DNA of 64,000 nt, taken from positions 682,001 to 746,000 of the forward strand of contig JANJGN010000017.1 in the NCBI GenBank assembly GCA_026770705.1, read 5' to 3'. The first letter of the stretch is position 1, and every line of letters starts with the position of its first letter. Below, in pieces: positions 2,331 to 62,320 of the stretch. The notes under the pieces were generated by a model. That model worked only from the letters and a program-made list of their open reading frames with translations, had not been told where the DNA came from and searched no databases. Both the position numbers and the translations under genes were made by a program. This stretch comes from Isurus oxyrinchus. Its lineage: Eukaryota.

Positions 2331-2752
2331 TTCAGTATACGTTATATTTACATATTTAAGCATCTTAATACAAATGATCTTTTCTAACCTCTGACCCCCA
2401 AAACATGGCATTCCAATCTGTTGGCGTTATAAATTCTTCAGCTTTCAGCCTCATAGTTTATCGTAAGTCTTCAATCTTTTTTTATTTAAATTCATTGAAA
2501 GTCGGTGACAGTGTTCAAAGATGACTTCATTAATATTCTTCCAGCTCAAACTTACAAAATTGAAACAAAGCTTTCAGAGATCTCAGGACAATAACTTCTG
2601 TGATTTCTCAATAATCATTTAATAATGCAAAGGTAATGTAAGTGAAAAATAGAAGGAGATTAAAATTTGTGGTTATTTAAAGAATATTGAAAATGCAGTG
2701 GAAATATTGGCCTTTCTGTACTCTTACTCTCCAGTTCTAGCACCTACATTAT

Positions 2753-3457
2753 GGGCAGAATTTAGCCCATGTCGAGCGGGCTTGGCGGGAGCAGGCAGGT
2801 GCAGTTGGGAAACTGACCGCTGCCCGCGATTGGGGCCAGAAGGTGATTTCATGCTGGCAGGCCAATTAAGGCCTGCCCAGCGTGAATCACGATTGGCAGC
2901 GCTGAGCGCTGAGCATTGCCTGTGCAGGCAGAGGGAGGAGAGTGAGCAGGGTGAGTGCAAACTTCACACATGCAATGCAAGTGAGTGCTTGAAAATCTCC
3001 CTGAGGCACAGAGCTGCCCAAGAGAGATGAAACCTTTTTTAAAAAAACAATTTGAAAAATGTAATAAAACATGTCCCCTCGTGTCACTCTGTCACATGAG
3101 CAGGGACATGTTATTAATTAAATTTTAAAACTTTCATTTCATTTTTATTTGCTTTTGGAAACCTCATCCCGCCAGTGGATGAGTTTTCCAAAAAAATGCA
3201 AAGGCTGGTTGACCTTTTTGCCTGCCTGTCAACCATAATGTTGGACGGGCAATGAAAAATTTAACTTAATTGATTCTTTAATGGCTTTAATAGGCCTTTA
3301 AATTGTCAGCGGGTATGCTGCTGACTCTGGCGCGTGCCTGCCGACTGAACTATCACACGACTGCACGTTGATGTCAGGACACTCAGCTGACATCAACGCA
3401 TCTCATTTCACACTCAAGCAGGTCAGGCGCGCACCCACCGAGCTAAACATTTTGCCC
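2753..3457. mobile_element. Harbinger-family MITE
   Basis: TIRs gggcagaattt / aacattttgccc. Colinear with 55671 and 59585 copies, and ends match the Harbinger at 29580-33730. Confidence 0.85.
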
Positions 3458-4520: not shown

Positions 4521-5007
4521 TAAACACAGAGATAAAAACAAAAAACTGCGGATGCTGGAAATCCAAAACAAAAACAGAATTACCTGGAAAAACTCAGCAG
4601 GTCTGGTGATGCTGCCAGACCTGCTGAGTTTTTCCAGGTAATTCTGTTTTCGTTTTGGATTTCCAGCATCCGCAGTTTTTTTGTTTTTATCTCTGTGTTT
4701 AATTGACTGCCACTGCTCTTCAAGAAATGCCTACCTCCTTGAAGAAGTTCTGTTCGTCTCTGCGACAAGATTTCCGTATCCCTCTTTTGCCTTGTTCACC
4801 TTCATTGCTTTCAATTTCTCTCCTGGTGTTTGACAAGGTGTTTATATTTCACCCCTCTCCTTGGATTCACCTAGTTCTGTTGAAGGGTCATGAGGACTCG
4901 AAACATCAACTCTTTTCTTCTCCGCCGATGCTGCCAGACCTGCTGAGTTTTTCCAGGTATTTCTGTTTTTGTTTTGGATTTCCAGCATCCGCAGTTTTTT
5001 GTTTTTA
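4521..5007 (+). mobile_element. Penelope-like insertion: inverted terminal repeat plus partial tandem
   Basis: Inverted arms 4521-4606 / 4615-4701. Second direct copy with hammerhead motif at 4873-4911. 15-bp TSD tcagttctagtctgt at 4506-4520 and 5008-5022. Confidence 0.85.
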
Positions 5008-6659
5008 TCAGTTCTAGTCTGTACTGATTAAGGAAATCTATAGTGAGGCCTGATGTACCATTATAAACTGATTGAGCACATTGTCTGCTGGAGTTATTTC
5101 TCAAGATATCTGATTAATCAAAGCGGGACTTTGGTAAATTGTTTATTGTGGCTGCCTGCCACTGGATCTGGGCAAAGTGAAAGGTCAATTATCCCCCCTC
5201 AGAGATTCAGTATGGCAGGAAACACTAGGCCATTGTAGTGTTACAGTGCATCATACATTCTATTAGTTTAGCAACTAAGAAACTATCCCTAACATTTATG
5301 AAGCACTGTAACATGTTCAGTCAGTGGCCTTGGTTCATTTAACTATTGGGGCCATTGAACTTCTGACATATGATGGGAACTCCTGTAGGATGCATGATTT
5401 CAATGATAAGTGTGTTCAAGGAGAGGCAATGCATTAGTCTTTGCAACACCTATATAAAGGGTTGATATACCAGAGCCCAATCAAATTGATAACAGGTAAG
5501 TGAATAGTCTGCTTCATGTGGATCAGATCCTTTTCCACACCATGACATCTTGATTCTATAACTGAGTTGGTGAACTAAAAGTGTTTAGCTGCTGCCAAGC
5601 TGAGCTAGCAATTACTAATTAGCAAGCACATGCTTGAATAACATTTAATGTATGATTAGTGCTAATTAACTCCAACTCATATACCATTAAATGTTCTATA
5701 ACACACAGCAGAGAGGTATGAAACCCTTCTGGCCTATTAGTCACATCAGCATTACGATTGTTTACTTGCAGGCAAGGATCCTTCATGAAGTAAACAGAAA
5801 GAACTCTTCCAAAATGAAGGCTTTGCAAGTGCTCGCAGGTTGCATTTCAAATAACTATGTTGAAAACAACAATGCTGATTTACAGTGGCAAGGGCAGCAG
5901 AATGAACTACAAAATGAGAGACTAGGGATGGAATTGACCATGCTATTGGCACTTGCATGTGTAGACAATATGATGAGAAGGCCAAAAATCGGTTTCATGA
6001 TGTCGTGAAACCAGTTTGTGACCATCCGCTCAGCCTGTCAATGGTGGGTCGCGTTTCCCACCATCAGACTTCAGGAACCTCATTTTCATACATCTGCAAA
6101 TCATTGTAAGCCCAGCCCACAGGAATCGCCTGCCCCCAGGGATTGCCCACCCACATCGGCGTGACTTCACAACAGCGTATATAGGGCATGCACTTAGTGG
6201 GCTGCACTTTGAGGGGAACTTGGAGGTGAGCACACAGTAACGCTGTGCACACTTGCCAGGGTCACCTGTTGGACTTTGAGGTTGAGGCACATTGTTGGGG
6301 GGTGAGTGGGGCAAGGGCTCCCTGCAGTTGAAGGTAACGCACAAGCACATGCAGAGTGGGAGGAAAATAGCCACACATTAGGGAAACCTTGTATAAAGTG
6401 ACTATTCCTCTGAAGCTGAGACAATTCAGGCACAGCCACATGGATATGATTGAATTCGGGTCTCTAGCTTATCTGCCCACTCAAACAACGCAGAGGCATG
6501 AAAGCCCCACCAAGTGCTCCAAAGCTTTTCACTCCTCGGGCACAGACTACAAATTTATGAGCCTTTTAGTGGACTGCAGAACAGTCTGATGACTGGGCAT
6601 GTTGTACAATCTCGTCGCTAAAGCTGGCCATGGAGCAGTCACTCTGGAGGCAAAAGTTG

Positions 6660-6816
6660 AAAACAAAGAAAACTGCGGATGCTGGAAATCTAAAACAAAA
6701 ACAGAATTACCTGGAAAAACTCAGTAGGTCTGGCAGCATCGGCGGAGAAGAAAAGAGTTGACGTTTCGAGTCCTCATGACCCTTCGACAGAACTTGATTT
6801 CGAGTCCAGGAAAGAG
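6660..6816 (-). mobile_element. Penelope-like terminal repeat with intact hammerhead motif (6756-6794)
   Basis: Near-identical to the arm at 9998-10160. Minus strand reads AGTT CTGTCGA A GGGTC atgag GACTC GAAA CGTC AACT. Confidence 0.85.
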
Positions 6817-6852
6817 GCAATGTCATCATCCCAGTTTGGACCAGTCTCCCCC

Positions 6853-8014
6853 ATGGTTCAAGCTAACAGTGCAGCCTTGCAGTGTGGGTTAGGAGAATGC
6901 CTGTGTCCGAGCTGAGAGCACAGCCTGCAGTCCAATGGGCAAAGCTGCTGCCAATCGGTCAGATGGAGTGGAGTGGAGGTGGGTGGGGTTTTGGGCAGCC
7001 ATGCAGAGCACTAATCTCTGGCCATCCAAGTGGGGGCCAGCACTCTCCGGGATGTGTAAAGGGGCCTTCAGGCTTTGGCGCTACGGGGACATGGAAAGTA
7101 TCCACTGCCAGTGGCTGTGAGAGTGACTGTTCAATTTCAATGCCAGTGGCTCCTTTCAGGGCTCCACAGGTGACCTCTGTGGGATCTCACAAGCATCCAC
7201 CCACAAATGCATCTATGAGGTCACGGATGCCATCTTCGCGAGGGCACACAACATTGCTCATTTCGCCCAGGGCCAGGAGAACCAGGATACAAGAGCAATT
7301 GGATTTGCCCAGATCTTGGGTTCCCCAGAGGTGCAGGGTACGATCGACTGCACTCATGTGGCCCTCAGATCACAGTCACAACACGTGGTTAACTATGTCA
7401 ACTGCAAGGGCTTCCATTCGCTGAATGTGCAGCTGGTGTGCGGCCACCACAAACCCATCCTGCAGGTCTGTGCAAGGTTTCCAGGGATTGTCCACGACTC
7501 CTACATCCTCAGTCAGTCACAGATCCCTGAAGTCTTCCAGGGTCCACAGAAGCTGCAGGGTTGGCTCCTCGGGGACAAGGGCCACCCACAAAGGCCGTGG
7601 CTGATGACACCCGTGAGGCAGCCTCAGACTGCAGCAGAGCGACGCTATAATGAGGCTCATGCTGCAGCTCACAACTTGGTGAAGCAAATCATCGGGATGC
7701 TGGAGATGAGGTTCCGGTGCCTGGACCGGTCTGGTGGAACCTGCAATACAGTCCACAGAGGGTGTTATGCATTGTTGTCACCTGCTGAGCCCTTTACAAC
7801 CTGGCACTGCAACGGGGAGAGGAGCTGACTGAGGAGGAGATGGAGGAGCTGGAGGTCTCCTCCGACAAGCAGGATATCAACATGGATGAGAGTGAGCAGT
7901 TCGTCGAAGGCAACGATGATGGCGATGAGGCCCTTGCACTGGCCAGATGAGGCAGGCACCCTCAGGATGCCCTCAGCTGCTAGACCTGTGGAGGATGATG
8001 ACGACATACAGTGA
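6853..8014 (+). pseudogene. Harbinger (HARBI1-like) DDE transposase, frameshifted
   Basis: Motifs SGSFQGSTGDLCGISQ, VQGTIDCTHV, NCKGFHSLNVQLVC, RFPGIVHDSYIL, WLLGDKGHP, YNEAHAAAHNLVKQIIGMLEMRFRCL. Confidence 0.92.
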
Positions 8015-9997
8015 GGAGACACCACAGATCCTCACATTGTATCTGTGAATGTTTGACTCCATCTGGCTTATGGCAGTGCACATACCCTCTGTGTTAAGGC
8101 TCCTGTCATGGCCCTAATAGTCGCTCAATTGCAGGAAGATGATGACAACATGCAGTGAGGACACTCCATAGATCTTCACATAGCCTCTGAGAATGTCTGA
8201 CTCCTGTCTGGCCGAGGGCAGCTCGCTTGCGCTCTGTGATCAGGGTCATATCACAAAAACACAGCCATGAAACTTTAGAAGCATCTGATCCTTTGTCCAC
8301 CTTCAGCACCTGAGCCCTTCAGGAGCACAGCGCCACTGGTCACAGATGCTGAAGAGATGGGGACCAGCCCCATCTTAAAGATGTTGAGAGCACATAGAGA
8401 GTATGATGGAACTCTGTGATGCCTGCCACTACATTCTGGCAGCAATGACCAGCACCATCGAGGTGCAGGCATCTGTAATGTGTCCAGGGACAGTGAGGCT
8501 GGACCATCACTTTGGTCTAAAGGCTGCACAGACTGGACTGAGACACCTGCCTTTATCTTGTACAGAAAGGCTTCACATCTGAGTGACATGAACACTGCTC
8601 ATCAGAAAAGGGAGCCATAGACAATGAGACATTCTTGGGAGTTTATTTACAATAGTGAGCATTATGTACAAGTGATTAACACCCGTGCCCAGGCTGTGCA
8701 ACTAAATCTTCTTAACCTACTCGAAAGAGTTACATCTTCTTAACCTTCCTAACCCTGTCTCTATGTCTTGGTGCTCCCCGGACATCCACAGCAGAGGTGG
8801 GGGCAGCCTGCTGACTGTGACTCCCTGTCTGTGATGACCTTGGTGGGTGTCCTCTGGAGGGCTGAGACCTGGAGGGTCCCGGCCTGCTTTCGGGGTCCTG
8901 CTGTGTGGCAGTGGCTCCCTCCTCAGCCTGTGGAGCTGGAGCTGCTGAGGTCACAGGAAGAGGGGATTCGGATGGCCCAAACAGTCCTGGAGTCGCCTGG
9001 ATAGATGGCCCCAGGGTTATCCTCCTCCCTATGGGTTCCCAAGGACCCCTGGCTGATTCCTTGAGGAGAAGGCATAGCTGGAGTGAGATCGAGTTTCCCC
9101 CCACCCCTCTCGTGTACACACTGTTGGGAGCCAACTATGGCATCAGTGATGGAGTTCAGCCCGTATAGCAGTGCAGGAGCAAAGTCCTAGACCAAGGTCT
9201 CCATGGTGGCTGCCATCCTACCAGTGATGACATTGGCACATTGGTATGCCAGTGCTATCATCTCAGAATGAAGGCAGATTGACTCCTCCATCGTTCCTTC
9301 AATCTGAGGTGTGCAGCAGACATCCCTCCTTGGTGTTCCCGAGCTCCAGCAACTGAGGTGTGACATGGTCCAGAGGGTCCTCATCTGACTCAGACTCAGC
9401 AGATATCCAGCCTCCAGCAGTCCCCCAACTGCCAGCCACCTGGGAAGTCTCTGCCTCTGCCTGTTGTGGATCAGACAGTGCGATGTGCTCACCAGATTGT
9501 GATCCTGAGGCTGCTGTAAAGCTAGGGCCCACTGAGGTATGTGTCTCTGCGCTGGTGGAGGGTGTGGGTGAGCGCTGTGACGGGATTTCAGGGAGGGTGC
9601 CTCCAGATTCCTCTTCAGAGGTTTCTTTGGGGCTTGATTGGAGGCCCTGGGTCATGGACTTCATTGGCTGTTTCCCAGATGTGCCTATGAAAGCAAGAGG
9701 AGATAATTAGTGTATGGCAGTGGCCTGTGAAACAGGAAACCTCACTCACAGCCTGGTTGTCTGATGGATGTTGCACTGCCAGATTCTCACCTGGTAGAGC
9801 CCCACCAACCTCACCATCAGCACAGGACCCATCCAGATTCTCGCTGGCCAGCTGGATGGCTCTGTTTTCAAAGTCCATGAGGACCTTGATTTCAGGCATT
9901 CCTCCACCGGTCTGCGATCTCTCCCTCTCCTGCTTGTCCTGCATCAATACAGATGGAGAGAGTGTAAGCAGGATGCCTGCCAGACCAGATGATAAGT

Positions 9998-10345
9998 ATA
10001 AAAACAAAAAAACTGCGGATGCTGGAAATCCAAAACAAAAACAAAAACAGAATTACCTGGAAAAACTCAGCAGGTCTGGCAGCATCGGCGGAGAAGAAAA
10101 GAGTTGACGTTTCGAATCCTCATGACCCATCGACAGAACTTGAGTTCGAGTCCAAGAAAGAGTTGAAATATAAGCTGGTTTAAGGTGGGGGGGTGGGGAC
10201 ACCTTAAACCAGCTTATATTTCGACTCTTTCTTGGACTCGAACTCAAGTTCTGTCGAAGGGTCATGAGGACTCGAAACGTCAACTCTTTTCTTCTCTGCC
10301 AATGCTGCCAGACCTGCTGAGTTTTCCAGGTAATTCTGTTTTTGT
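9998..10345. mobile_element. Palindromic Penelope-like insertion with two opposed hammerhead motifs
   Basis: Near-perfect inverted arms of ~145 bp around a G-rich loop at 10187-10200. Motifs at 10102-10140 (-) and 10247-10285 (+). Confidence 0.9.
10247..10285 (+). ncRNA. Minimal type I hammerhead ribozyme-like motif, predicted cleavage after C10281
   Basis: agtt CTGTCGA a gggtc atgag gactc GAAA cGTC aact. Stem I agtt/aact, stem II gggtc/gactc. Confidence 0.65.
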
Positions 10346-10619
10346 CCCTGTGGATTCATGATGGGTTTGTGAGTGTGTGAGTTGAGAGTAATGAGAAGAA
10401 TGACTTACTCTGGCGGAATGGAGGAGATCATTCATCCTCTTGCATCACTGAGTGGCTGTCCTCTTATGCAGGGCGTTAGCACTGACCACCACTGCCACCG
10501 CCTCCCAAACTGGATTAGTGAGATTGTTGCCCATCCTGCGGCATTAAACCTGGGCTGGAAGTGCTGAGAGGTGTGCACACAGCTGGAATTTAAATAAATA
10601 ATAACGGGTCAATTGCACT

Positions 10620-11159
10620 TGTTAAAAAGCCAACTGACCCCAATAATACATCATCCACACTGTAATACAGGGTTGGTAGGCAGTTGGGCGGGAAAAACTT
10701 CTAAAACCCTTTTAAAAGGGCGGTTAGGAAGATTGTTGCTATCGTTGGGAAGGGTACCCTTTTGCTATCGTTGGGAAGGGTACCCTTTCCCCCTTTCTTC
10801 TTACCCGCCTGCTCACCAAAGCCCCCACCCCTACCCCCTTTCCCCCTCCTTAAACTGGCCAAACCCTGCCTGCCCTATATCCCGAACTTACCTCCCTCTG
10901 GGATCCATTGGGCCTTCTTCCTGCTCCTGGTTACAGTCCCGGCAATGCTGGCCAATCCGATTGGCTGGAAGCTCCTGAGGCTGGGCCTTCCTCCCCAGTG
11001 TCAGGTGGAGGTCCCACCAGTGGGGTATTTAGCCCCCCACAGCATGTTACAGCGTGGGGCAGGCTAGTGTGGAGCGAGACAGCCACCCACCGGCTTTGCT
11101 TCCAGGGGAGCAAGGCATCAGTCCACCCCTCTGCCCCCAACCCCCACAAAATGCAGCCC
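10620..11159. mobile_element. Harbinger-type MITE relic
   Basis: GC-rich segment ending in aaaatgcagccc, the reverse complement of a gggc-tg-aatttt-type TIR. Contains a 26-bp tandem duplication near 10735-10787. Confidence 0.5.
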
Positions 11160-11351
11160 TAGATTACACAACAGCTGCTAAACATAAATAATTTGTCCAT
11201 TGTTGCTGATGTCATAATACTGTACTCACAACAGCTCTTTTATTAAAATTAACAAATGGTATGTCAAGTCTTGAGCATCCAAATGCAAAAATCTTCACTT
11301 CCCAGTTGACATTCCTCACTTGAATAAACGACGCAATGTTGCTACTTCTCA

Positions 11352-11772
11352 GTGTCAGTAGTGGCTCAGTTGGTAGCCTTTGAGTCAGAAGGTTTTGGAT
11401 TTAAGTCCCACTCCAGGACTTCAGCACAAAAATCACTCCAGTGCGGTACCGATGGATTGCTGCATTGTCCAGTGTGCTTTTTGAACTGTACTCTCAAGTA
11501 GATGTAAAAGATTGCAGAGCATTATTTCGAAGAAGGGCAGAGGAGTCATCCCCAGTGGACGGACCAAAATTTATCACTTAATCAACATTACAAAACCAGA
11601 TTAGCTGGTCATTATTATATTGCTGTTTGTGGGAGCTTGCTGTGTGCAAATTGCCTGCCATGTTTTCTACAGTACAACAGTGATTACATTTAAAAGATAT
11701 TTCATTGGCTGTCAGTGCTTTGGGGCATCATGTGGCATAAAAGGTGATATATAAATGCAAGTCTTACTTTCT
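11352..11772 (+). mobile_element. tRNA-derived SINE with Deu-type core (SacSINE1/AmnSINE1-like) and L2-type tail
   Basis: Box A gtggctcagttgg, box B-like gatttaagtccc, core gatgtaaaag...gaagaagggcag, tail tatataaatgcaagtc. Confidence 0.85.
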
Positions 11773-12270
11773 CAGAGACATAAGATTGAGCAAAGTTATA
11801 TCAGAAGTGTCAATGGGAATAGTACTTGTATTTGTCTGGTGTCTTATCACATTAAAACACTTCCTGCAATTATTGAAAACAGAAAACATTATTGACTTGT
11901 CTTGAAACGCCATAGCTATTGTGTTTAGGTGAACACAACTTCATTTCAGTATCTGCAACATCCCACAAACATTAATAGGATGAACAGTTAACCTGCTTTA
12001 TTTCTGAATGTCTTAGCTAAGGAAAGAATAAATGTATGGATGGCAGAAGAATTTATCAAAAGGACAGCACATCCAATGTTCCAATAGTCCCTCTGTTCCT
12101 AAATTACAGCAGTGACTACTTCAAAAATATTAAGTTGTCTGTGGAGTACTTTCAGATCTTGAGGTCATGAAAGGCACTATATGAATGCAAACCAGTCTTG
12201 ACAATACAGCACTGGAAAGTTGACCTAGACTATGAGCTCAAATCCTGGTGTGCACTCACAATTTCTGATA

Positions 12271-12458
12271 CACATAAACATACAAATTAGGAGCAGGAGT
12301 AGGCCACTCAGCCCCTCGAGCCTGCTCTGCCATTCAATAAGATCTGATTGTAACCTCAACTGCACTTTCCTGCCTACCCCAATAACCCTTCACGCACCCT
12401 GTGTATCAAGAATCTATCTAGCTATTGCCTTAAAAAGATTCAAAGACTCTGCTTCCAC
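12271..12458 (-). mobile_element. CR1 3' tail fragment
   Basis: catacaaattaggagcaggagtaggccactcagcccctcgagcctg is the reverse complement of a CR1 3' terminus. Confidence 0.75.
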
Positions 12459-12984
12459 TAATCTAACAATTAAACCAAGCTGACACATGTTTAAGTTATA
12501 CAAACATTGTAAACAGCTGATTTGAATTCTTGCCTTTTTTCAGACTCACCTAAAACCTAAACCATATGATTTATGTCCTCTGAATTTTGGCAATAAGAAC
12601 AAGGAAAGAAGGATTTGCATTTACATGTACCGAACCCCTTATCAGGCATCCCAAAATCCAAAAGGGCCAGGAACTGGGTCCTGCACACGTCTATCACATC
12701 TGCGTCATGGTGTGCTGATCCTCTGCTCTTTGGGTCCAGCCATTTTTATTCCATGTTGGGAATAGCAGCACAGAAGCCAGCCTGGTCCACCCCTCATCAT
12801 CCATTCCCTGGACAGAGAAATCAGCCCAGCTTTAAGTTTTAATGAATTATTATCCTATCCCCTGCCCACCCCCACCCCCACCCCCAAAATCTGGAAAATC
12901 CACAAATTTGGCACAAGTCCAGTCCTGTGCTCCCCAGATAGGGGGTCCTGTACCTGTATCTAGCAATTTTGTGGCCCAATTAAA

Positions 12985-13100
12985 CCTTTTAAAGTACAGT
13001 CACTGCAGGAAATGTGGCAACCAATTTGTGCACAGTCCCAAAAACAGAAATGGGATAATGACCAGACATTGGCCAGGACACTAGGGAGGTTGCTTTGCTC
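12985..13100 (-). mobile_element. Deu-type SINE split by the Gypsy insertion (continues at 21623)
   Basis: ...ttggccaggacactagggagg...tgctc resumes as ttcttcaaaaaagtgccataggatcttt after the far LTR. Confidence 0.75.
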
Positions 13101-13339
13101 TGTTGACAGGTGAGTCGATTACAATATGCTGCAGATGCAGAGACCAATATGAAATGAAGCAGATGCTATTGATTTACAGACACAACAGAGCATTAACATG
13201 TTGCGCGCTTCTCCAACCAGAGCCCACTCTAGACTAACATTTACATGGTAGCCCGTGCTACACAGCTATTGGGTCATATAGTCACATGGTCAATCTGCTC
13301 ACAGTCTCTTAAAGGTGTATTACACCTCAGATTACCACA
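13101..13339 (-). repeat. 3' LTR, missing ~53 bp of its outer end
   Basis: Diverged direct repeat of 21370-21619, adjacent to the polypurine tract aaagggggaggga. Confidence 0.9.
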
Positions 13340-13701
13340 TCCCTCCCCCTTTATTTGAAAGTACATTTTACAATTAATTACCTATTTACATAAATGAACT
13401 ATTTACAAATTCAGGCTCTCGGGAGGCTTTTTCAGACCAGTCGACCATCGTAGTTCTGTGACTTCCAATGGTTTATCTGAGGCCTCCCTCTCAGGAGTCA
13501 TCTGTCCACTAGGCCCCCCCCCACCAACCCCAGTAGGAACCTGCAGGTTTGCCTCTATGACTCCCTCAGGCTCAATGGGTCCTACAGGTACTTCCAAAGC
13601 AAGAGGTGCTCCTTCTACCTGTGGTGTAGACTTCAGCGGGAATGTTTGGTGTTGCTTTTCTTATCGATCTGTTTCCCGTTCCCTGAGGTGATCTAGATGT
13701 C

Positions 13702-16700
13702 TTTTTTTTTATTCATTTATGGGATGTGGGCTTCACTGGCTGGGCCAGCATTTATTGTCCATCCCTAACTGCCATTTGAGAAGGTGGGGATGAGCTGCTT
13801 TCTTGAACAACTGCAGTTCATGTGGTGTAGGTACATCCACAGTGCTGTTAAGAAGATAGTTTCAAGGTTTTGACCCAGCAACAGTGAAGGAACGGTGATA
13901 TATTTCCATGTCAGGATGGTATGTGTCTTGGAGGGGAACTTCCAGGTGGCAGTGTTCCCATGTATCTGCTGCCCTTGTCCTTCTAGATGGTAGTGTTCAT
14001 GTGTTTGGAAAGTGCTGTCGAAGGAACATTGGTGAATTCCTGTAGCGCATCTTGTAGATGGTACACACTACTGCTGTGCGTCGGTGATGGAGGGAGTGAA
14101 TGTTTGTGGACGTGGGTGTGGTGTCAATCAAGCGGGCTGCTTTGTCCTGGACAGTGTCCAGCTTCTGAATGTTGTGGGAGCTGCACTCGTCCAGGCAAGT
14201 GGAGTGTATTTCATCACACTCCTGATGTGCCTTGTAGATGGTGGATAGGCTTTGGGGAGTCAGAATGTGGGTTACTCGTCGCACTATCCCTAGCCTCTGA
14301 CCTGTTCTTGTAGCCATGGTATTCATATGGCTACTCCAGCTCAGTTTCTTGTCAATGGTAACCCCCAGGATATTGATAAAGGAGGATTCAGTGATGGTAA
14401 TGCCAATGAACATCAAGAGGTGATTGTTAGATTTTCTCTTGTTGGAGATGGTCATTCCCTGACACTTGTGTGGCGTGAATGTTACTTGCCACTTGTCAGC
14501 CCAAACCTGGATATTGTCCAGGTCTTGCTGCATTTGGATATGGACTGCTTCAATATCTGTGGAGTTGCGAATGGGGCTGAACATCGTGCAATCATCAGCG
14601 AACATCCCCACTTCTGACTTTATGATGGAAGGAAGGTCATTGATGAAGCAGCTGAAGATGGTTGGGCCGAGAACACTACCCTGAGGAACTCCTGCAGTGA
14701 TGTCCTGGAGCTGAGATGATTGACCTCCAACAACCACAACCATCTTACTTTGTGCTAGGTATGACTCCAACCAGCAGAGAATTTTCCCCGTGATTTTGAA
14801 AGACTCCAGTTTTGCTAGGGCTCCTTGATGCCACATTCGGTCAAATGCTGCTTTGATGTCAAGGTCAGTCACTCTCACCTCACCTCTGGCATTCAGCTCT
14901 TTTGTCCATGTTTGAACCAAGGCTGTAATGAGGTCAGGAGCTGAGTGGCCCTGGCGGAACCTAAACTGGATGTCAATGAGCAGTTTACTGCTAAGCAAGT
15001 GCTGCTTGATAGCACTGCTGATGATCCCTTCCATTACTTTACTAATGATGGAGAGTAGACTGATGGGACAGTAGTTGACCGGGTTGGATTTGTCCTGCTT
15101 TTTGTGTACAGGACATACCTGGGCAGTTTTCCACATAGCCAGGTAGATGCCAGTGTTGTAGCTGTACTGGAACAGCTTGGTTAGGGGTGCGGCAAGATCT
15201 GGAGCACAAGTTTTCAGTTCTATTGCCTGAATATTGTCAGGGCCCATAGCCTTTGCAGTATCCAGTGCCTTCAGCTGTTTCTTGATATCACGTGGAGTGA
15301 ATCGAATTGGCTGAAAACTGGCATCTGTGATGCTGGGGACCTCTGGAGGAGGCCGAAATGGATCATCCACTTGGCATTTCTGGCTGAAGATTGTTGCAAA
15401 TGCTTCAGCCTTATCTTCTGCACTGATGTGCTGGGCTGCTCCATCATTGAGGATGGGAATGTTTGTGGACCTCCTCCTCTAGTGAGATGTTTAATTGTCC
15501 ACCACCATTCACGACTGGATGTGGCAGGACTGCAGAGCTTAGATCTGATCTGTTGTGGGATCGCTTAGCTCTGTCTATCACTTTTTGCTAATGCAAGTAG
15601 TCCTGTGTTATAGCTTCACTAGGTTGACACCTCATTTTTAGGTATGCCTGGTGCTGCTCCTGGCATGCCCTCCTGCACTCTTCATTGAACCAGCGTTGAT
15701 CCTCTGGCTTAATGGTAATTGTAGAGTGAGGGATATGCCGGACGATGAGATTACAGATTGTGCTTGAGTACAATTCTGCTGCTGCTGATGGCCCACAGCG
15801 TCTCATGGATTCCCAGTCTTGAGTTGGTAGATCTGTTCGAAATCTATCCCATTTAGCACGGTGGTAGTGACACACAACACGATGGAGGGTATCCTCAATG
15901 TGAAGGCGGGATTTCGTCTCCACAATAACTGTGCAGTGGTCACTCCTACCGATACAGTCATGGACAGATGCATCTGCGGCAGGCAGGTTGGTGATGATGA
16001 GGTCAAGTATGTTTTTCCCTCTTGTTGGTTCCCTCACCACATGCCGCAGACCTAGTAGCTATGTTCTTTAGCAATTGGCCAGCTCGGTCAGTAGTGGTGC
16101 TACCAAGCCACTCTTGGTGATGGACATTGAAGTCCCCCACCCAGAGTACACTCTGCACCTTTGCCACCCTCAGTGCTTCCTCCAAGTGGTGTTCAATATG
16201 AAGGAATATTGATTCATCAACCGATGGAGGGCGGTACATGGTAATCAGCAGGAGGTTTCCTTGCCCATGTTTGACTTGATGTCATGAGGCTTCATGGGGT
16301 CAGGAGTCGACGTTGAGGGCTCCCAGGGAAACACCTTCCCGACTGTATACCACTGTGCCTCCCCTTCTGCTGGGTCTGTCCTGTCGGTGGGACAGGAGAT
16401 ACCCAGGGATGGTGATGGTGGAGTCTGGGACATTATCTGTAAGGTATGATTCCGTGAGGATGACTATGTCAGGCTGTTGCTTGACTAGTCTGTGAGACAG
16501 CTCTCCCAATTTTGGCACTAGCCCCCAGATGTTAGTAAGGAGGACTTTGCAGGGTTAACAGGACTGAGATTGTCGTTGTCGTTTCCGGTGCCTAGGGCGA
16601 TGCCGGGTGGTCCGTCCGGTTTCATTCCTTTTTTGTGACTTTGTAACGGTTTGTTATAACTGAGTGTCTGGCTCGGACATTTCAGAGTCAACCACGTTGC

Positions 16701-16911
16701 TGTGGGTCTGGAGTCACATGTAGACCAGACCAGATAAGGATGGCAGATTTCCTTCCCTAAAGAACATTAGTGAACTAGATGGATTTTTACAACAATCAAC
16801 AATGGTTTCATGATCATTAGGCTTTTAATTCCAGATTTTTATTGTATTCAAATTCCACCATCTGCCATGGCAGGATTCAAATCCAGAGCATTACCCTGGG
16901 TCTGAATTACT
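13702..16911 (-). mobile_element. Near full-length single-ORF non-LTR retrotransposon (CR1/Jockey group, Zenon-like) with tRNA-SINE-derived 5' end
   Basis: APE motifs DIVILTESYL, WVGDFNVHH, NILDLIIT, SDHC. RT motifs DIKAAFDRMWH, GVPQGSVLGP, GMFADD. Poly(A) tail at 13702-13710. 16677-16911 aligns to the SINE at 21714-21949. Confidence 0.93.
13997..16680 (-). pseudogene. APE endonuclease-reverse transcriptase ORF (several frameshifts and stops; 457-aa open RT segment at 13997-15370)
   Basis: ORF-track fragments 16300-16518, 16003-16239, 15588-16040 and 13997-15370 tile the APE and RT domains. Confidence 0.92.
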
Positions 16912-17328
16912 CGTCTCCTGGTTATTTGTATATTCAGTCAATATGTGGTAGGACAGGGGTCCTGTCACTGCATTAACTTCACCTGAGATCCATTTCAGCC
17001 CAACTCCAAAGTTCTTTGCAAAAACTGCTTCTCCTACAGTGAAGTTTCTTTCATGACTGTGGTAATTGTGTTCATTTTTCTGGACCTCTTGACTTCTCTG
17101 TACCCTCCCCGCTAAATTTGGCCTTATGAGGCTTAACCATGTCCTGAGACGTCTCTTCATTAATAACTCTGCAAGGCAATAGCGGTGATTGTATGTGGCG
17201 TAGTCCTATAGCTGAGCAGGAAACGTGATAATTTAGTTTCGGCCTTGAAGGTCTGAACTGCCCTCTCAGCCAATCCATTGGATGCAGGGTGGTATGATGA
17301 GGTCTTGACATGTGTTATGCCATTGAGA

Positions 17329-17937
17329 GGGAAGCAATGGCATCTACAAGGCACAAGTCAGGAGTGTGATGGAATACTCCCCACTTGCCTGGATGAGTGC
17401 ACTTCCCACAATACTCAAGAAGCTTGACACCACCCAGGACAAAGCAGCCTGCTTGATTGGCACCATTCACTCCCTCCACCACCAACGCACAGTAGCAGAA
17501 GTGTGTACCATCTACAAGATGCACTGCAGGACTTCACCAAGGCTCCTTCAAGGTGGTGGTGTTGCCATCTATCTGCTGCCCTTGTCTCCTAGATGGTAGT
17601 GATCATGGGTTTGGAAGGTGCTGACTTCCAAACGCATGACTGCTACCATCTGGACAGACAGGGGCAGTAGATAGATGGCAACACCACCACCTGTAAGTTC
17701 CCCTCCAAGTCACTCACCATCCTGACTTAGAAATATATCGCCATTATTCACTGTCGCAGGGTCAAAATCCTGGAATTTCTCCACCCCCCCTCCAACAGCA
17801 CTGGGTGTACCTCCACCACATGGACTGCAGCGATTCAAGAAGGCAGCTCACCACCACCTTCTCAAGGCCAATAGGGATGGACAATAAATGCTGGCCCAGC
17901 CAGCGAAGCCCACATCCTGTGGATGAATAAAAAAAAG
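17329..17937 (+). mobile_element. Truncated, rearranged copy of the same Zenon-like LINE inserted in the Gypsy integrase
   Basis: Interrupts EFQRFTSL|NGITHVK. gaga duplicated at 17325-17328 and 17938-17941. Poly(A) tail and internal inversion. Confidence 0.9.
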
Positions 17938-21681: not shown

Positions 21682-22025
21682 GGGAGGCGGTGGCACACTG
21701 GTATTGCCACTGGCTAGTATTCCAGAAACCCGCAGTAATGCTCTGGGGACTTGGGTTCAAATGATGAAATTTGAATTCAATAAAAAGTTGGAATTAAAAG
21801 TTTGATGCTGACCATGAAACCATTGCCAATTGTTGTAAAAACCCATCTGGTTCACTAATGTCCTTTAGGGAAGGAAATCTTCCGTCCTTACCTGGTCTGG
21901 TCTATATGTGACTTCAGACCCACAGCAATGTGGTTGACTCTTAAATGCCCTTTGGACAAGGACAATGGGCAATAAATGCTGGTCTAGCCAGTGATGCCCA
22001 CATCCCATGAATTAATTTTTAAAAA
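21682..22025 (+). mobile_element. tRNA-derived SINE sharing 5' body and 3' tail with the Zenon-like LINE
   Basis: Box A-like tggcacactgg at 21691-21701, anticodon-arm-like ctgg-ctagtat-tccag, box B ggttcaaat at 21754-21762, tail gggcaataaatgctggtctagccagtgatgcccacatcccatgaa. Confidence 0.9.
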
Positions 22026-39940: not shown

Positions 39941-40777
39941 AATTTGATATGAAGTTGTTATATGTTCATATAATTATAGTATTTGGCATAATTTCCAGGA
40001 TTTTACTGGGAGAAACTTCTCATTAGCTCAGCAACAAATCTACTCAAGCTTCTAAACAAATTGGCAAGGGAGAATGATTCCCAGAGTCTTTCCACATTTC
40101 ATGTGACTGTCCTTGGGGTCTTTACATACAAGTCATTTCCTGGTAATGTCAAGCAAGGAGGTTTGATCCATACTTTTCCTGGAAACTACATGCTGACACC
40201 GGAGTTACAATTTTTAGAATATACTGGCAGAGAAAACACATGCATGGGTTGAAGTGTCACCATGGACTGTTAGCGATGCAGTTATTAACATGTTCTTACG
40301 AAATGTCTCACCCACTATTCTAATGAAGGTGTAAACTTATTTATATAAAATCGTTCAATATTTGCTTAAAATCTGGACAGAGTAATTACATATGAACACA
40401 TTAATATATGCATTACTGACATTATAGAATGAGATTTCATTCCCTGCTATAAGATTTACCACCCAACACAATAAAGTACCCCCCAACAAAATGACATTTC
40501 TCGGTGGGAAATTATACACAGATGACATCAAAGTGGAAAATCCTAATCCAAGTTTTAATTTAACTCTTACATTGCCAATGTTTATTTGTCCAGTTCTGAT
40601 ATAAACAAATCTGATTATATGCACCTTCTATCCATTCTTAATAATTGCAGGTTACTAGGACTTTATTCGTGCATAAATAGAACAAAAATTCAAGTTGTGC
40701 TAAAATGCCATCTTGTGGTAACATTGAAGAAATAAGGCAACTGTGCCATGGGATATGAATCCAGATTCTAGGTTCTA

Positions 40778-42210
40778 GATTCTGGAAATGTCCCAGCAGG
40801 TTGGAAAACAGCAAATGTAACTCTACTGTTCAAGAAAGGAAGGGCATAGAAAGCAGGGAATGATAGGCCAGTTATTCTAACATCTTACATTGGGAAAATG
40901 TTAGAATCCATTGTTAAGGAGATGGTAGCAGGACCTTTAGAAAATCATAATATAATCAGGCAGAGTCAACATGGTTTTTGCGAAAGGGAAATTGTGTTTG
41001 AAAAATTTATTGTAGTTCTTTGAGGATGTAAAAAACAGGGTGGATAAAGGAGAACCAGTAGATGTAATGTATTTGAATATCCAAAAGGCATTTAATAAGG
41101 TGTCACATAAAAGGTTACTGCAGAAGCTAAGAGCTCATGGTGTTGGGGGCGATATATTAGCACAGATAGAAGATTGGCTAACTAATAGGAAACAGCCAGG
41201 AAAAATGGGTCATTTTCAGGTTGGCCAACTGTAACTAGTGGAGTGTCACAGGGATCAACTATTTACAATTTATGCGAATGACTTGGATGAAAAGGCCTAC
41301 AGTATAGTAGCCACATTTTCAGATGATACAAAGATAGGTAGGAAAGCAAGTTGTGAGGGGGTTATAAAGAGTCTGTGAATGGATGCAGATAGGTTAAGTG
41401 AGTGGGTGAACATTTGGTAGGTGCAGTATAATGTGGGAAAATGTGAGATCATCCACTTTGGAAGGAAGAATAGAAAAGCAAAATATTATTTAAATGGAGG
41501 GAAACTGCAAAATGCTACATTAGGGAGGGATCTAGATGACCTTATATGAATCACAAAAAAGTTAGCACACAGATACTGCAAGTAATCAGGAAGACAAATG
41601 GAATTTTGACCTTTATTGCAAGGTGATGGAATATAAAAGTAGGGAAGTCTTGCGTCAACTTTACAGGGCATTGATTAGATCACACTTGGAGTACTGCGTA
41701 CAGTTTTGATCTCCTTACTTAAGGAAGGATACACTTGCATTGGAAGCAGTTCAAAGAAGGTTCACCAGGCTGATTCCTAGGATGAAAGGGCTAACTTCTG
41801 CGGAAAGGTTGAGCAGATTAGGCCTATCCTCATTGGAGTTTAGAAGAATGAAAGGTGATCTTATTGAAACATAAGTTTCTGAGGGGGCTTGGCAAAGTAG
41901 AATTTTTTATCTCGTGGGGAATCTGGAACTAGGGGGACACATTTAAAAGTAAGAGTTCCCCCATTTAAGACTGAGATGAGAAATTTCTTATTTCAGAGGA
42001 TCATTAGTCTTTGGAATTCTCTTCCATGAAGGCTGGGTCATCGAATATATTCAAGGTTGATTTAGACGGATTTTGATTGACAAGGAACTTAAGGGTTATG
42101 GGGCAGGAAAGTGGAGTTAAGGCCAAAATCAGATCAGCCCTGATCTTATTGAATGGCAGAGCAGACTCGATGGGCCGAATGGCCTCCTGCTGCTCCTATT
42201 TCTTATGATC
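40778..42210 (+). mobile_element. 5'-truncated CR1 LINE (decayed RT and 3' UTR)
   Basis: WKTANVTLLFKKG, VDVMYLNIQKAFNKVSH, SGVSQGS, FSDDTKIG, then the 3' gatgggccgaatggcctcct tail. Confidence 0.92.
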
Positions 42211-45311: not shown

Positions 45312-45630
45312 AGGCAGCACCTCCCAAACCCATGACCACTACCATCCAGAAGGACAAGGGCAGCAGACACATGGGAACACCACTGCCTAGAAGATCCCCT
45401 CCAAGCCACTCACCATCCTGACTTGGAAATATATTGGCCATTCCTTCAGTGTCACTGGGTCAAAAACTTGGAATTCCCTCCCTAACAGCTCTGTGGGTGT
45501 ACCTACACCACATGGACTGCAGCGGCTCAATAAGGCAGCTCACCACCACCTTCTCAAGGACAACCAGGAATGGACAATAAATGCTGGCCCAGCCAGAAAC
45601 GTCCACATCCCATAAAACAAAATTTAAAAA
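45312..45630 (+). mobile_element. Zenon-like LINE 3' end
   Basis: Aligns to the reverse complement of 13702-14020. Confidence 0.9.
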
Positions 45631-50460: not shown

Positions 50461-51038
50461 GCTTGGAGGGGAGCTTTCAGGTGGTAGTGTTCCCATCTAT
50501 CTGCTGCCCTTGTCCTTCTAGATGGTAGCGGTCAATGGGTTTGGAAGGTGCTATCTAAGGAGCCTTGGTGAATTGCAACAATGCATCTTGTAGATGGTAC
50601 ACACTGCTGCTTCTATGCATTGGTGGTGAGGAAGTGAATGTTTGTGGATGTGGTGCCAATCAAGCAGGGTTGCTTTGTCTTGGATGGTGTCCGGCTTCAT
50701 CAGTGTTATTGGGAGCTGCACTCATCCAGGCAAGTGGGGAGTATTCCATCACACTCCTGACTTGTGCCTTGTAGATGGTGGACAGGCTTTGGGGAGTCAG
50801 GGGGTGAGTTACTCTCCGCAGGATTCCTAGCCTCTGACCTGCTCTTGTAGCCACAGTATTTATATGGCTAGTCCAGTTCAGTTTCTGGTCAATGGTAACC
50901 CCCAGGAGGTTGATAGTGGGAGATTCAGTGATGGTAATGACATTGAACATCAAGGGGTGATGGTTGGATTCTCTCTTGTTGGAGATGGTCATTGCCTGAT
51001 ACCTGTGTGGCGCGAATGTTAATTGTCAGCCCAAGACT
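50461..51038 (-). mobile_element. Zenon-like LINE RT C-terminal fragment
   Basis: Colinear with 13927-14510. Confidence 0.92.
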
Positions 51039-55082: not shown

Positions 55083-55394
55083 CATGGATATGATTATTCA
55101 TCTGAATGCATGGTAAGATGGTTAATTGACCATGTTTCCCTCAAACTTTTTTCCCTGTAAGGAATGCCACCCACTAGCTGACCAGAGGCAGGGGCGCTAT
55201 TGAACAAGTACAATATGCCTCAGAGGCCTGTTTTTGGGAGCAGGTTGGGGATCTTGATCCATTGATCTCTGCAAACTGTGCATTAGATAAGAGGAGGTTC
55301 AGCCTTGACTGTGATGCTCTCATGGTTGCAAAGCACAGTAACAAGCAATATCCACAAGACTGGTTGCTTGGATGTAAAAGATTACATGGTATTA

Positions 55395-61884: not shown

Positions 61885-62175
61885 CTTATCTGTACAGGAC
61901 CATTCTATTTATTTCCTCCACTTCTTCATACACTTTTGTCTACCAAACTCATGTCATTTCCAACATTGAACTTAAAACTGGTAGAAACTCAATTTAAAAC
62001 GCTTACTTTAAAAAAAATCCAATTTAAAACCTATTATTTGTTTGCTATTCTATATATATATCTTTATAAATAAAGTGCAAGTACCTTGCTCTTATAACGT
62101 ACAGAAACTGTACTCAGTAGATGCATGTTATAATGAATTGAAACCTTAAACTCTATCTGGTTTATGAACACAGGA

Positions 62176-62320
62176 ACAGCACTGTGGGTGGGCCTATGCC
62201 ACAGGGACCGCAATGGTTCAAGGCGGCAGCTCACCACCGCCTTCTCAAGGGCAATTAGGGACAGGCAACTAACGCTGGCCTAGTCAGTGACACCCAAATC
62301 CCATAAACGAAAGAAAAAAA
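62176..62320 (+). mobile_element. Zenon-like LINE 3' tail
   Basis: gcagctcaccaccgccttctcaagggcaattaggg...atcccataaacgaaagaaaaaaa. Confidence 0.85.

What the first reader, a model, noticed from the sequence alone, without database searches (positions are those of the whole stretch)
13702..16911. Protein-coding LINE with a tRNA-derived head and almost no Pol III terminators: candidate Pol III-transcribed autonomous retrotransposon
Seen: the 5' 235 bp (16911-16677) align with the tRNA-SINE at 21714-21949. This covers an anticodon-loop remnant agtaa, a hairpin ccagggt-aat-gctctgg, a degenerate box B atttgaatcc, and the SINE body. It runs directly into a basic leader (RTTRHRPRHRKRQR) and the APE-RT frame, with no ORF1; an in-frame ATG sits at 16680, followed by two stops in this copy. 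Seen: by eye the 3.2-kb sense strand has one run of 4 or more T (plus-strand aaaa at 15314-15317) against about 17 runs of 4 or more A. The CR1 at 52634-54205, half the length, has about 8 sense T-runs. Other fragments of the family (17329-17937, 45312-45630, 50461-51038) also lack T4. Known: vertebrate Pol III terminates at 4 or more T and uses internal A/B boxes; LINEs are normally Pol II transcripts. Inference: the LINE captured a tRNA (possibly Thr-AGT) promoter, its ORF was purged of T-runs, and it would need cap-independent translation. Whether this has been described needs a literature and Repbase check.
Basis: partly seen in the sequence, partly recalled or inferred. Interest (0 to 1): 0.88.

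Follow-up and report, generated by a model that had tools for sequence, protein, structure and literature searches.

The report
Shark LINE with SINE-type head
A decayed shark jumping gene (a LINE that encodes its own copying enzyme) starts with part of the same tRNA-like leader as the small SINE that borrows its machinery, which suggests the SINE is a shortened copy of the LINE; whether the LINE uses that leader as its promoter is not shown.

Summary
The alignments and counts hold. The minus-strand element 16914-13702 is a decayed single-ORF LINE with APE and RT domains. Its first ~240 bases are collinear with the head and body of the SINE at 21690-22016 (86% over 193 bases). Its last 52 bases match the SINE tail (88%). 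The SINE therefore looks like the LINE's 5' part joined to its 3' part.

This copy starts inside the tRNA-like unit. It has no box A, and ARAGORN and Rfam call no tRNA.

The sense strand has one T4 run against 18 A4 runs. Reads from the family show that this one T4 is private to the copy. For this copy the scarcity is not significant (dinucleotide shuffles P=0.14). A family state of zero is modestly unusual (synonymous shuffles P=0.015). Other LINEs in the window carry about 5 T4 per kb.

Whether masters carry the head is therefore untested here. The scan has noted the same architecture in at least 20 other windows of this genome, all unchecked first-reader notes.

Pol III transcription of the whole LINE is possible but not shown (about 0.15). 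No such LINE turned up in four paper searches.

The parts
13702..16914 (-). Decayed copy of a single-ORF LINE, slightly 5'-truncated. Order along the element: head remnant, body, APE, RT, 3'UTR, short A run.
   Evidence: There are stops and frameshifts. No target-site duplication of 7 bases or more.
16865..16914 (-). 3' half of the tRNA-like unit: anticodon-loop-like stretch, a hairpin and a box-B-like motif. Box A is missing.
   Evidence: Gapped alignment to SINE 21714-21757. The hairpin appears in the MFE fold. The region is multi-copy (table 4, place 16881).
16675..16864 (-). 5'UTR body shared with the SINE
   Evidence: 86.0% identity over 193 bases with 21758-21950
16678..16680 (-). In-frame ATG at the 3' edge of the shared body, the likely start of the APE-RT frame. 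Seven other ATGs lie upstream in the 5'UTR.
16006..16554 (-). Apurinic/apyrimidinic-type endonuclease domain, in two stop-free pieces
   Evidence: Pfam Exo_endo_phos 9.4e-05 and Exo_endo_phos_2 4.5e-09
14354..15097 (-). Reverse transcriptase domain, inside the 493-aa stop-free piece 15478-14000
   Evidence: Pfam RVT_1 2e-33, residues 128-375 of the piece
15314..15317 (-). The only run of four T on the sense strand, private to this copy
   Evidence: At 15316 the family reads G on the plus strand in 1863353 of 2097123 depth units in X1, and likewise in X5, X15 and X17 (table 3).
13702..13999 (-). 3'UTR. Its last ~52 bases are the tail shared with the SINE: a small hairpin CTGGC/GCCAG, AATAAA motifs and a short A run.
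21690..22016 (+). Partner SINE: tRNA-like head with box-A-like and box-B-like motifs, the LINE 5' body, and the LINE 3' tail
   Evidence: No tRNA call.
17341..17936 (+). 5'-truncated, internally rearranged 3' fragment of the same LINE family
   Evidence: 79.7-87.3% identity; one piece inverted. 0 T4 runs.
45315..45616 (+). 5'-truncated 3' fragment of the same LINE family
   Evidence: 83.2%. No head or body upstream.
50462..51028 (-). Internal fragment of the same LINE family (LINE positions about 2470-3034)
   Evidence: 84.7%
62175..62320 (+). 3' end fragment of the same LINE family
   Evidence: (77.6%)

Best explanation
This is an old, broken copy of a very abundant elasmobranch LINE family, truncated by roughly 25-30 bases at its 5' end. 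The family is about 3.2 kb long with one APE-RT reading frame and no ORF1. Its full-length RNA begins with the same tRNA-like head and ~190-base body that make up the 5' two-thirds of its partner SINE, and it ends with the same ~52-base tail.

The SINE is therefore a bipartite derivative of the LINE: the 5' part plus the 3' part. It arose most simply by internal deletion of a headed LINE, or by recombination between the two RNAs.

Both elements are copied by the LINE's reverse transcriptase, which starts at the shared 3' hairpin tail (inferred from what is known of LINE-SINE pairs that share a 3' tail). In the SINE the head serves as a Pol III promoter (inferred). Which polymerase makes the full-length LINE RNA is open. 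The family's lack of T4 runs means that Pol III starting in an intact head would not be stopped inside the element, but Pol II transcription remains the default expectation.
For: - Collinearity of head, body and tail between the LINE and the SINE.
- No SINE tail lies between the body and the ORF, and the ORF's ATG lies in the shared stretch.
- The copy starts inside the head, as expected for 5' truncation of an RNA that carried it.
- A 326-base contig from another copy (X1 record 8) bridges the ORF start and the body, 16388-16713, with 0 gaps (table 8).
- Joined forms 13768/16678 and 13757/16703 occur in 3 of the 4 runs each. At least three different sets of letters lie between the two sides, and one of them keeps more of the LINE 5' region (tables 5, 5c).
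- Body (86.0%) and tail (88.5%) identity between SINE and LINE lies at or above the top of the LINE-to-LINE range here (77.6-87.3%), so the two have not evolved apart.
- 0 of 4 truncated fragments have head or body upstream, which excludes homing into a SINE.
- Family-level T4 absence.
- At least 20 first-reader notes report the same architecture in other windows of this genome. These are unchecked leads only.
Against: - Only one 5'-complete LINE copy and one SINE copy are in the window, and no other full-length copy could be fetched.
- This copy lacks box A.
- No tRNA is called by ARAGORN or Rfam.
- In X1, laid depth falls from 1.9 million in the body bin to 92,773 at place 16881 and to 15,916 in the bin 16876-16992. 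That is lower than in the ORF 5' bins (tables 2, 4). It could mean that most copies do not share this head, although the tool warns that depth is no copy number and the gapped head alignment would be clipped.
- Homologous template switching from LINE RNA to the far more abundant SINE RNA within the shared ~190 bases would give the same picture in single copies.
Confidence: 0.55

Rival explanations
1. The LINE is an autonomous retrotransposon transcribed by Pol III from the A and B boxes of its tRNA-derived head. Its 3.2-kb sense strand has been purged of T4 terminators, and the uncapped RNA is translated by a cap-independent route.
For: - The head is collinear with the SINE.
- Combining the two decayed copies points to a canonical box B. 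The LINE reads TTTGAATCC and the SINE reads GGTTCAAAT, the two products of CpG decay of one motif (the box B consensus is recalled).
- There is one T4 in 3210 bases, and it is private to this copy.
- P(0)=0.015 under synonymous shuffles and 0.013 under codon permutation.
- Other LINEs in the window have 15 T4 in 2851 bases and 6 in 1304 bases.
- TT odds ratio is 0.82 against 1.20 and 1.18.
- Seven upstream ATGs in the 5'UTR argue against simple scanning.
- There is no ORF1, and a templated short A run sits at the 3' end.
Against: - There are no transcription data of any kind. All four runs were contigs, which cannot show RNA starts, ends or strand.
- For this copy the depletion is not significant (P=0.143 dinucleotide, 0.089 synonymous), and it was noticed post hoc.
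- AATAAA motifs are conserved in 4 of 5 tails, as in Pol II polyadenylated RNAs.
- The 5'UTR is not unusually structured (z -1.5 and -1.9).
- No natural Pol III transcript of this length that encodes a protein is known to me (recalled).
Confidence: 0.15
2. The LINE master has no tRNA-like head and its 5'UTR starts at the body. The SINE arose as Kojima (2018) proposed: a bipartite non-autonomous LINE gained a head by template switch. Headed LINE copies such as this one are then recombinants, made when the reverse transcriptase switched from LINE RNA to SINE RNA within the shared ~190 bases, or by later gene conversion.
For: - The shared stretch is long and similar enough for copy-choice.
- SINE parts are far more abundant than the ORF 5' region in the RNA-like runs. 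In X15 the depth is 183,693 in the bin 16642-16758 against about 5,000-16,000 in the ORF 5' bins (table 2).
- Depth over the head remnant is far below that of the body.
- Kojima 2018 describes this route for RTE and Vingi partners (PMC5786205, section 22 read whole).
Against: - The same architecture is reported in at least 20 other windows (unchecked).
- This model does not explain the absence of T4 runs.
- No headless full-length copy has been seen, though none could be looked for.
Confidence: 0.25
3. Chance juxtaposition or homing. Either a SINE landed at the 5' break of a truncated LINE, or the LINE inserts specifically into a site inside the SINE, so that head, body and tail are target flanks.
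For: A Tx1-type LINE behind a tRNA-Thr-like head, with homing considered, was reported elsewhere in this genome (s1-871382).
Against: - No SINE tail lies between the body and the ORF, and no second tail follows the LINE 3' end.
- Another copy shows the same body-ORF junction (X1 record 8).
- 0 of 4 truncated fragments have head or body upstream. Only 9-11-base matches were found, at E 0.12-0.56.
Confidence: 0.03

Closest known systems
SINEs built from a small-RNA head plus the 5' and 3' ends of a LINE (Bov-tA, SINE2-1_EC, SINE2_Gav, WALLSI and others; Kojima 2018, PMC5786205; Okada and Hamada 1997, as cited there)
   Same: The SINE here has the same three-part build: a tRNA-like head, a middle part homologous to the partner LINE's 5' region (86% over 193 bases), and a tail homologous to the LINE's 3' end (88% over 52 bases).
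   Different: In that paper only RTE and Vingi LINEs contribute 5' regions, and the autonomous LINE is not described as carrying the head. Here the protein-coding LINE copy itself carries part of the head. Its nearest named relative is labelled jockey-type rather than RTE (P0013), but the clade was not tested by a tree.
HE1 SINE / HER1 LINE of sharks and rays (Ogiwara et al. 1999, seen only as a table row and a reference in PMC3747384), and SacSINE1 with its L2-2_CM-like tail (Luchetti et al. 2017, PMC5499810)
   Same: Same host group. These are tRNA-headed SINEs that share a 3' tail with a LINE.
   Different: No reference sequences were available, so identity with either pair could not be tested. 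The parts of those papers that I read describe tail homology only, and no homology between the SINE and the 5' end of a LINE.
[quoted passage not shown]
   Same: A LINE that contains a tRNA-like stretch which hits many tRNA-headed SINEs.
   Different: It is mentioned only as a source of hits to be removed. Its position and role are not given, and it belongs to another clade and host.
Chimeric LINE insertions with small RNAs by template switching (for example U6/LINE-1; bioRxiv 10.1101/2025.02.02.635956, seen in a search listing only)
   Same: A small Pol III RNA sequence joined to the 5' side of a LINE copy.
   Different: As I recall, those chimeras join the whole small RNA to a truncated LINE at varied points and are one-off events. 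Here the junction is collinear with a SINE through ~240 bases and appears to be family-wide.

Membership tests
APE-type non-LTR retrotransposon (LINE) | Apurinic-type endonuclease domain upstream of a reverse transcriptase domain in one frame | tested here: met
   Pfam Exo_endo_phos and Exo_endo_phos_2 on the 16554-16006 pieces, and RVT_1 at 2e-33 on 15478-14000. The frame is broken by stops and shifts.
APE-type non-LTR retrotransposon (LINE) | Copies truncated at the 5' end that share a common 3' end | tested here: met
   Four 3' fragments in the window, with a common tail in 5 aligned copies.
SINE with a bipartite LINE-derived body and tail (Kojima 2018 class) | Middle part homologous to the partner LINE's 5' region, and 3' end homologous to the LINE's 3' end | tested here: met
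   86.0% over 193 bases and 88.5% over 52 bases.
SINE with a bipartite LINE-derived body and tail (Kojima 2018 class) | Head derived from a small RNA (tRNA) with A and B boxes | tested here: inconclusive
   Box-A-like and box-B-like motifs can be read at 21693 and 21761. ARAGORN finds 0 tRNAs, and there is no Rfam tRNA match even at E<=10.
SINE with a bipartite LINE-derived body and tail (Kojima 2018 class) | Partner LINE of the RTE or Vingi clade | not tested
   No clade-labelled reference proteins were at hand. The best named hit is labelled jockey-type, and the atlas gave no clade.
Pol III type 2 (tRNA-type) transcription unit | Box A and box B at tRNA-like spacing | tested here: not met
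   In this LINE copy box A is absent because the element starts in the anticodon-loop-like region. Box B has two departures that fit CpG decay. The SINE copy has both motifs in decayed form.
Pol III type 2 (tRNA-type) transcription unit | No run of four or more T between the start and the intended end | tested here: met
   One T4 in 3210 bases, private to this copy. The statistical weight is modest.
Pol III type 2 (tRNA-type) transcription unit | Transcripts made by Pol III (uncapped, amanitin-resistant, TFIIIC/TFIIIB bound) | not testable with these tools
   All runs laid were contigs.
HE1/HER1 or SacSINE1/L2-2 pairs of cartilaginous fishes | Sequence identity with the published consensus, and a V or Deu conserved domain in the body | not testable with these tools
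   No reference sequences were held. The original papers were not held either.

The most novel reading that the evidence does not exclude
A protein-coding LINE family of sharks natively starts with a tRNA-type Pol III promoter and is transcribed end to end by Pol III through a 3.2-kb body kept free of T4 terminators. Its SINE partner arises again and again by simple internal deletion. This would be an autonomous element that lives like a SINE, and it would show one concrete origin of a SINE body.
Probability: 0.15. Interest if true: 0.9.

Novelty: new variant of a known kind. Interest (0 to 1): 0.62.

Why it matters
Where the middle 'bodies' of SINEs come from is an old open question. The current proposal (Kojima 2018) has a headless deleted LINE gaining a head later, and documents it only for RTE and Vingi partners.

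A coding LINE that itself carries the head would reverse the order of events: a headed LINE first, then the SINE by deletion. It would also add another LINE lineage to the list, and it would give a system in which the step can be watched in a living genome.

If the head also drives the LINE, this would be the first Pol III-transcribed autonomous retrotransposon and a natural case of a Pol III-made messenger RNA.

Tried and rejected
**Fetching other full-length copies**
- The search for related loci on metagenome contigs and genome contigs, using the 84-aa APE piece, matched patterns but found no relative. On viral contigs, using the RT piece, it found nothing.
- The DNA search with a body motif found nothing in metagenome contigs or viral contigs.
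- In genome contigs it found 8 stretches in MAGs. By BLAST and alignment all were chance matches of at most 28 bases.

**Protein libraries**
- No intact family member is held. Close hits (69-80% identity) are fragments inside shark and ray gene models. Full-length relatives are only about 40% identical.
- The protein atlas gave only generic RT clusters. The LINE clade was therefore not placed.

**Read laying**
- So much was laid (517,003 pieces in X1) that the loose ends at the 5' junction were not among the rows shown. It could not say what lies upstream of the head remnant in other copies.

**Structure**
- Folding the 5'UTR and the SINE gave z-scores of -1.54 and -1.93, so there is no strong structure signal.

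**Readings rejected**
- Homing into a SINE.
- A chance SINE insertion at the 5' break.

**Body domain**
- The claim in another window's note that the body is a Deu-like core could not be tested, and neither could a V domain. The source papers were not held and no reference sequences were available.

**Literature**
- Searches for a headed or Pol III LINE listed 6, 1, 2 and 5 papers. None describes one by its title or abstract start.
- Repbase, Dfam and supplements were not searchable and may hold such a family.
- Supplementary figures of Kojima 2018 and Luchetti 2017 (alignments of SINEs to LINEs) were not seen and may bear on identity.
Full report
**What is there.** The minus strand from about 16914 to 13702 holds a 3.2-kb non-LTR retrotransposon copy.
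- Translation shows a basic leader and then an endonuclease and reverse transcriptase frame broken by stops and frameshifts.
- Pfam finds Exo_endo_phos (9.4e-05) and Exo_endo_phos_2 (4.5e-09) on the two N-terminal pieces. It finds RVT_1 (2e-33) on the 493-residue stop-free piece 15478-14000.
- Only about 234 bases precede the in-frame ATG at 16680, so there is no ORF1.
- Four more fragments of the family lie in the window, all from the 3' part: 17341-17936, 45315-45616, 50462-51028 and 62175-62320. They are 77.6-87.3% identical to this copy.

**The shared ends.**
- BLAST aligns LINE 16864-16675 with the SINE at 21758-21950 (86.0% over 193 bases). It aligns LINE 13762-13711 with SINE 21965-22016 (88.5% over 52 bases).
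- MAFFT and a pairwise alignment extend the 5' homology, with three indels, through a further ~47 bases to about 16911. This part corresponds to the 3' half of the SINE's tRNA-like unit.
- The SINE is therefore collinear with the LINE's first ~240 bases joined to its last ~52 bases.
- The LINE copy starts in the stretch that looks like an anticodon loop. The box-A half is absent, and the upstream flank shows no homology to it. No target-site duplication of 7 bases or more marks the ends.

**Is the head a tRNA derivative?** ARAGORN calls no tRNA in the window. Rfam gives nothing at gathering scores. On the SINE it gives 13 weak matches at E<=10, none of them a tRNA. What remains are box-like motifs. 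The two decayed copies differ at the box-B-like motif in exactly the way CpG decay of one canonical motif would produce. The consensus of box B is recalled, not computed. I treat 'tRNA-derived' as likely but not shown.

**Not a chance neighbour and not a target site.**
- No SINE tail lies between the body and the ORF, and no second tail follows the LINE's end.
- In the laid contigs a 326-base record (X1 record 8) from another copy lies on 16388-16713 with 0 gaps and 50 differences. The body-ORF junction therefore recurs (table 8).
- Joined forms that skip from about 16678 or 16703 to about 13768 or 13757 are seen in 3 of the 4 runs each. At least three different sets of letters lie between the two sides, and one of them keeps more of the LINE 5' region before joining the 3'UTR (tables 5 and 5c).
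- None of the four 5'-truncated fragments has head or body sequence within 400 bases upstream. Only 9-11-base matches were found, at E 0.12-0.56. This rejects homing of the LINE into a SINE.

**Abundance and host.**
- At 80% likeness, 517,003, 410,201, 26,188 and 12,832 contig pieces were laid from runs X1, X5, X15 and X17, which come from two coded organisms. The family is huge.
- The closest proteins (69-80% identity over a quarter to a third of the query) are fragments inside gene models of Heptranchias perlo, Mobula birostris and Heterodontus francisci. The family is therefore elasmobranch-wide.
- No intact member is in either protein library. Full-length relatives are about 40% identical.

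**T runs.**
- The sense strand has 1 T4+ run, 18 A4+, 7 C4+ and 6 G4+ runs.
- Mononucleotide expectation for T4 is 5.9.
- Dinucleotide-preserving shuffles give 3.33, sd 1.67, P(<=1)=0.143 (1000 shuffles).
- Synonymous-codon shuffles of the 2421 coding bases give 3.43, P(<=1)=0.089, P(0)=0.015. Codon permutation gives 4.08, 0.057 and 0.013 (1000 each).
- The one T4 is private. At 15316 the family reads G on the plus strand in about 89% of depth in X1, and similarly in the other three runs (table 3).
- Of the 34 best-supported family-majority differences listed inside the element, one removes that T4 and none creates one. A further 727 differences were not shown.
- The four fragments (1611 bases) have 0 T4, but only about 0.8 are expected.
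- Two other LINEs in the window have 15 T4 in 2851 bases and 6 in 1304 bases, which is in line with their own composition. Their TT odds ratios are 1.20 and 1.18, against 0.82 here.
- Fair statement: the family is strikingly poor in T runs compared with its neighbours. Much of that comes from low T and low TT. The excess depletion is modest (P about 0.015-0.04 if the ancestral count is 0), and it was noticed post hoc.

**Other features that bear on the polymerase.**
- The tail is conserved in five copies and carries AATAAA motifs (4 of 5 copies) and a small hairpin that keeps pairing through two one-sided changes. The hairpin fits recognition of the 3' tail by the reverse transcriptase. The AATAAA motifs fit Pol II polyadenylation as well as anything else.
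- The 5'UTR has seven upstream ATGs. It is not unusually structured (z -1.54; the SINE gives -1.93).
- All runs were contigs, so no RNA start, end, strand or level can be read.

**Results against a native head.** In X1, depth drops from about 1.9 million in the body bin to 92,773 at place 16881 and to 15,916 in the bin 16876-16992. That is below the ORF 5' bins (tables 2 and 4). This may mean that most elements sharing the body do not share this head. It may also reflect clipping of a gapped, ~70% identical terminal stretch. The tool warns that depth is no copy number. Together with the large excess of SINE parts in the RNA-like runs (table 2), it keeps alive the rival in which headed LINE copies are recombinants made by template switching within the shared body.

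**Other windows.** The scan's notebook lists at least 20 first-reader notes in other windows of this genome that describe a ~3-kb ORF1-less LINE with a tRNA-like head, often with 'no TTTT' and a SINE that looks like its deletion derivative. No follow-up is shown for any of them. I could not read their DNA, so they are leads, not evidence. They did raise my estimate that the head is a family feature. One followed-up note (s1-871382) concerns a different, Tx1-type LINE behind a tRNA-Thr-like head, and it prompted the homing test above.

**Comparison with what is known.**
- Kojima 2018 (PMC5786205; outline, section 22 whole, section 7 part 1 of 2, and passages) shows that SINE bodies can come from LINE 5' regions, but only for RTE and Vingi partners. 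It proposes that a headless bipartite LINE gains its head by template switch. [quoted passage not shown]
- Ohshima 2013 (PMC3747384, passages) lists HE1/HER1 and SacSINE1 for sharks.
- Luchetti 2017 (PMC5499810; outline, section 7, passages) describes only tail homology to L2-2_CM.
- Four searches for a headed or Pol III-transcribed LINE listed 6, 1, 2 and 5 papers, none on this subject by title or abstract start.

**Verdict.** The SINE-equals-LINE-ends relation is solid. A coding LINE copy that carries part of the SINE-type head is unusual, and I did not find it described. Whether masters carry the head is about 0.55, and whether Pol III makes the LINE RNA is about 0.15. Both remain to be tested on the whole assembly and at the bench.

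Noticed in passing
window 21753-21822 (+): The SINE body gives a cluster of weak C/D-box snoRNA-family matches (snoR25, SNORD5, snoZ199 and others; E 0.45-8, all far below gathering scores). They hang on a UGAUGA ... CUGA pair of motifs. The LINE copy lacks the CUGA, so this is probably chance.
   Followed up: partly
window 52287-55137 (-) and 40742-42045 (+): Two other RT-bearing LINE remnants from a different, C-poor family. They have ordinary T4 densities (15 and 6 runs) and were used as comparators.
   Followed up: partly
window 17341-17936 (+): This fragment of the same LINE family is internally rearranged. A 78-base piece (17546-17623) lies inverted between two direct pieces.
   Followed up: no
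window 16684 (-), table 7: Many contigs (102 in X15, 63 in X17) carry about 12 extra bases here that this LINE copy lacks. The window's SINE has a related insert, while another LINE-type contig (X1 record 8) lacks it. This may be a marker that separates LINE-type from SINE-type bodies.
   Followed up: partly
window 22010-22016 (+): The one SINE copy ends in a run of five T before its A run, at the place where LINE copies have only A. This could be a Pol III terminator in the SINE tail, but there is only one copy to judge from.
   Followed up: no
window 13702-13790 (-) and the aligned tails: The shared tail keeps AATAAA motifs in 4 of 5 copies, about 40 bases before the terminal A run.
   Followed up: partly
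window 10247-10285: Another first-reader note on this window (s1-898396) reports a minimal hammerhead in a Penelope-like repeat. I did not look at it.
   Followed up: no
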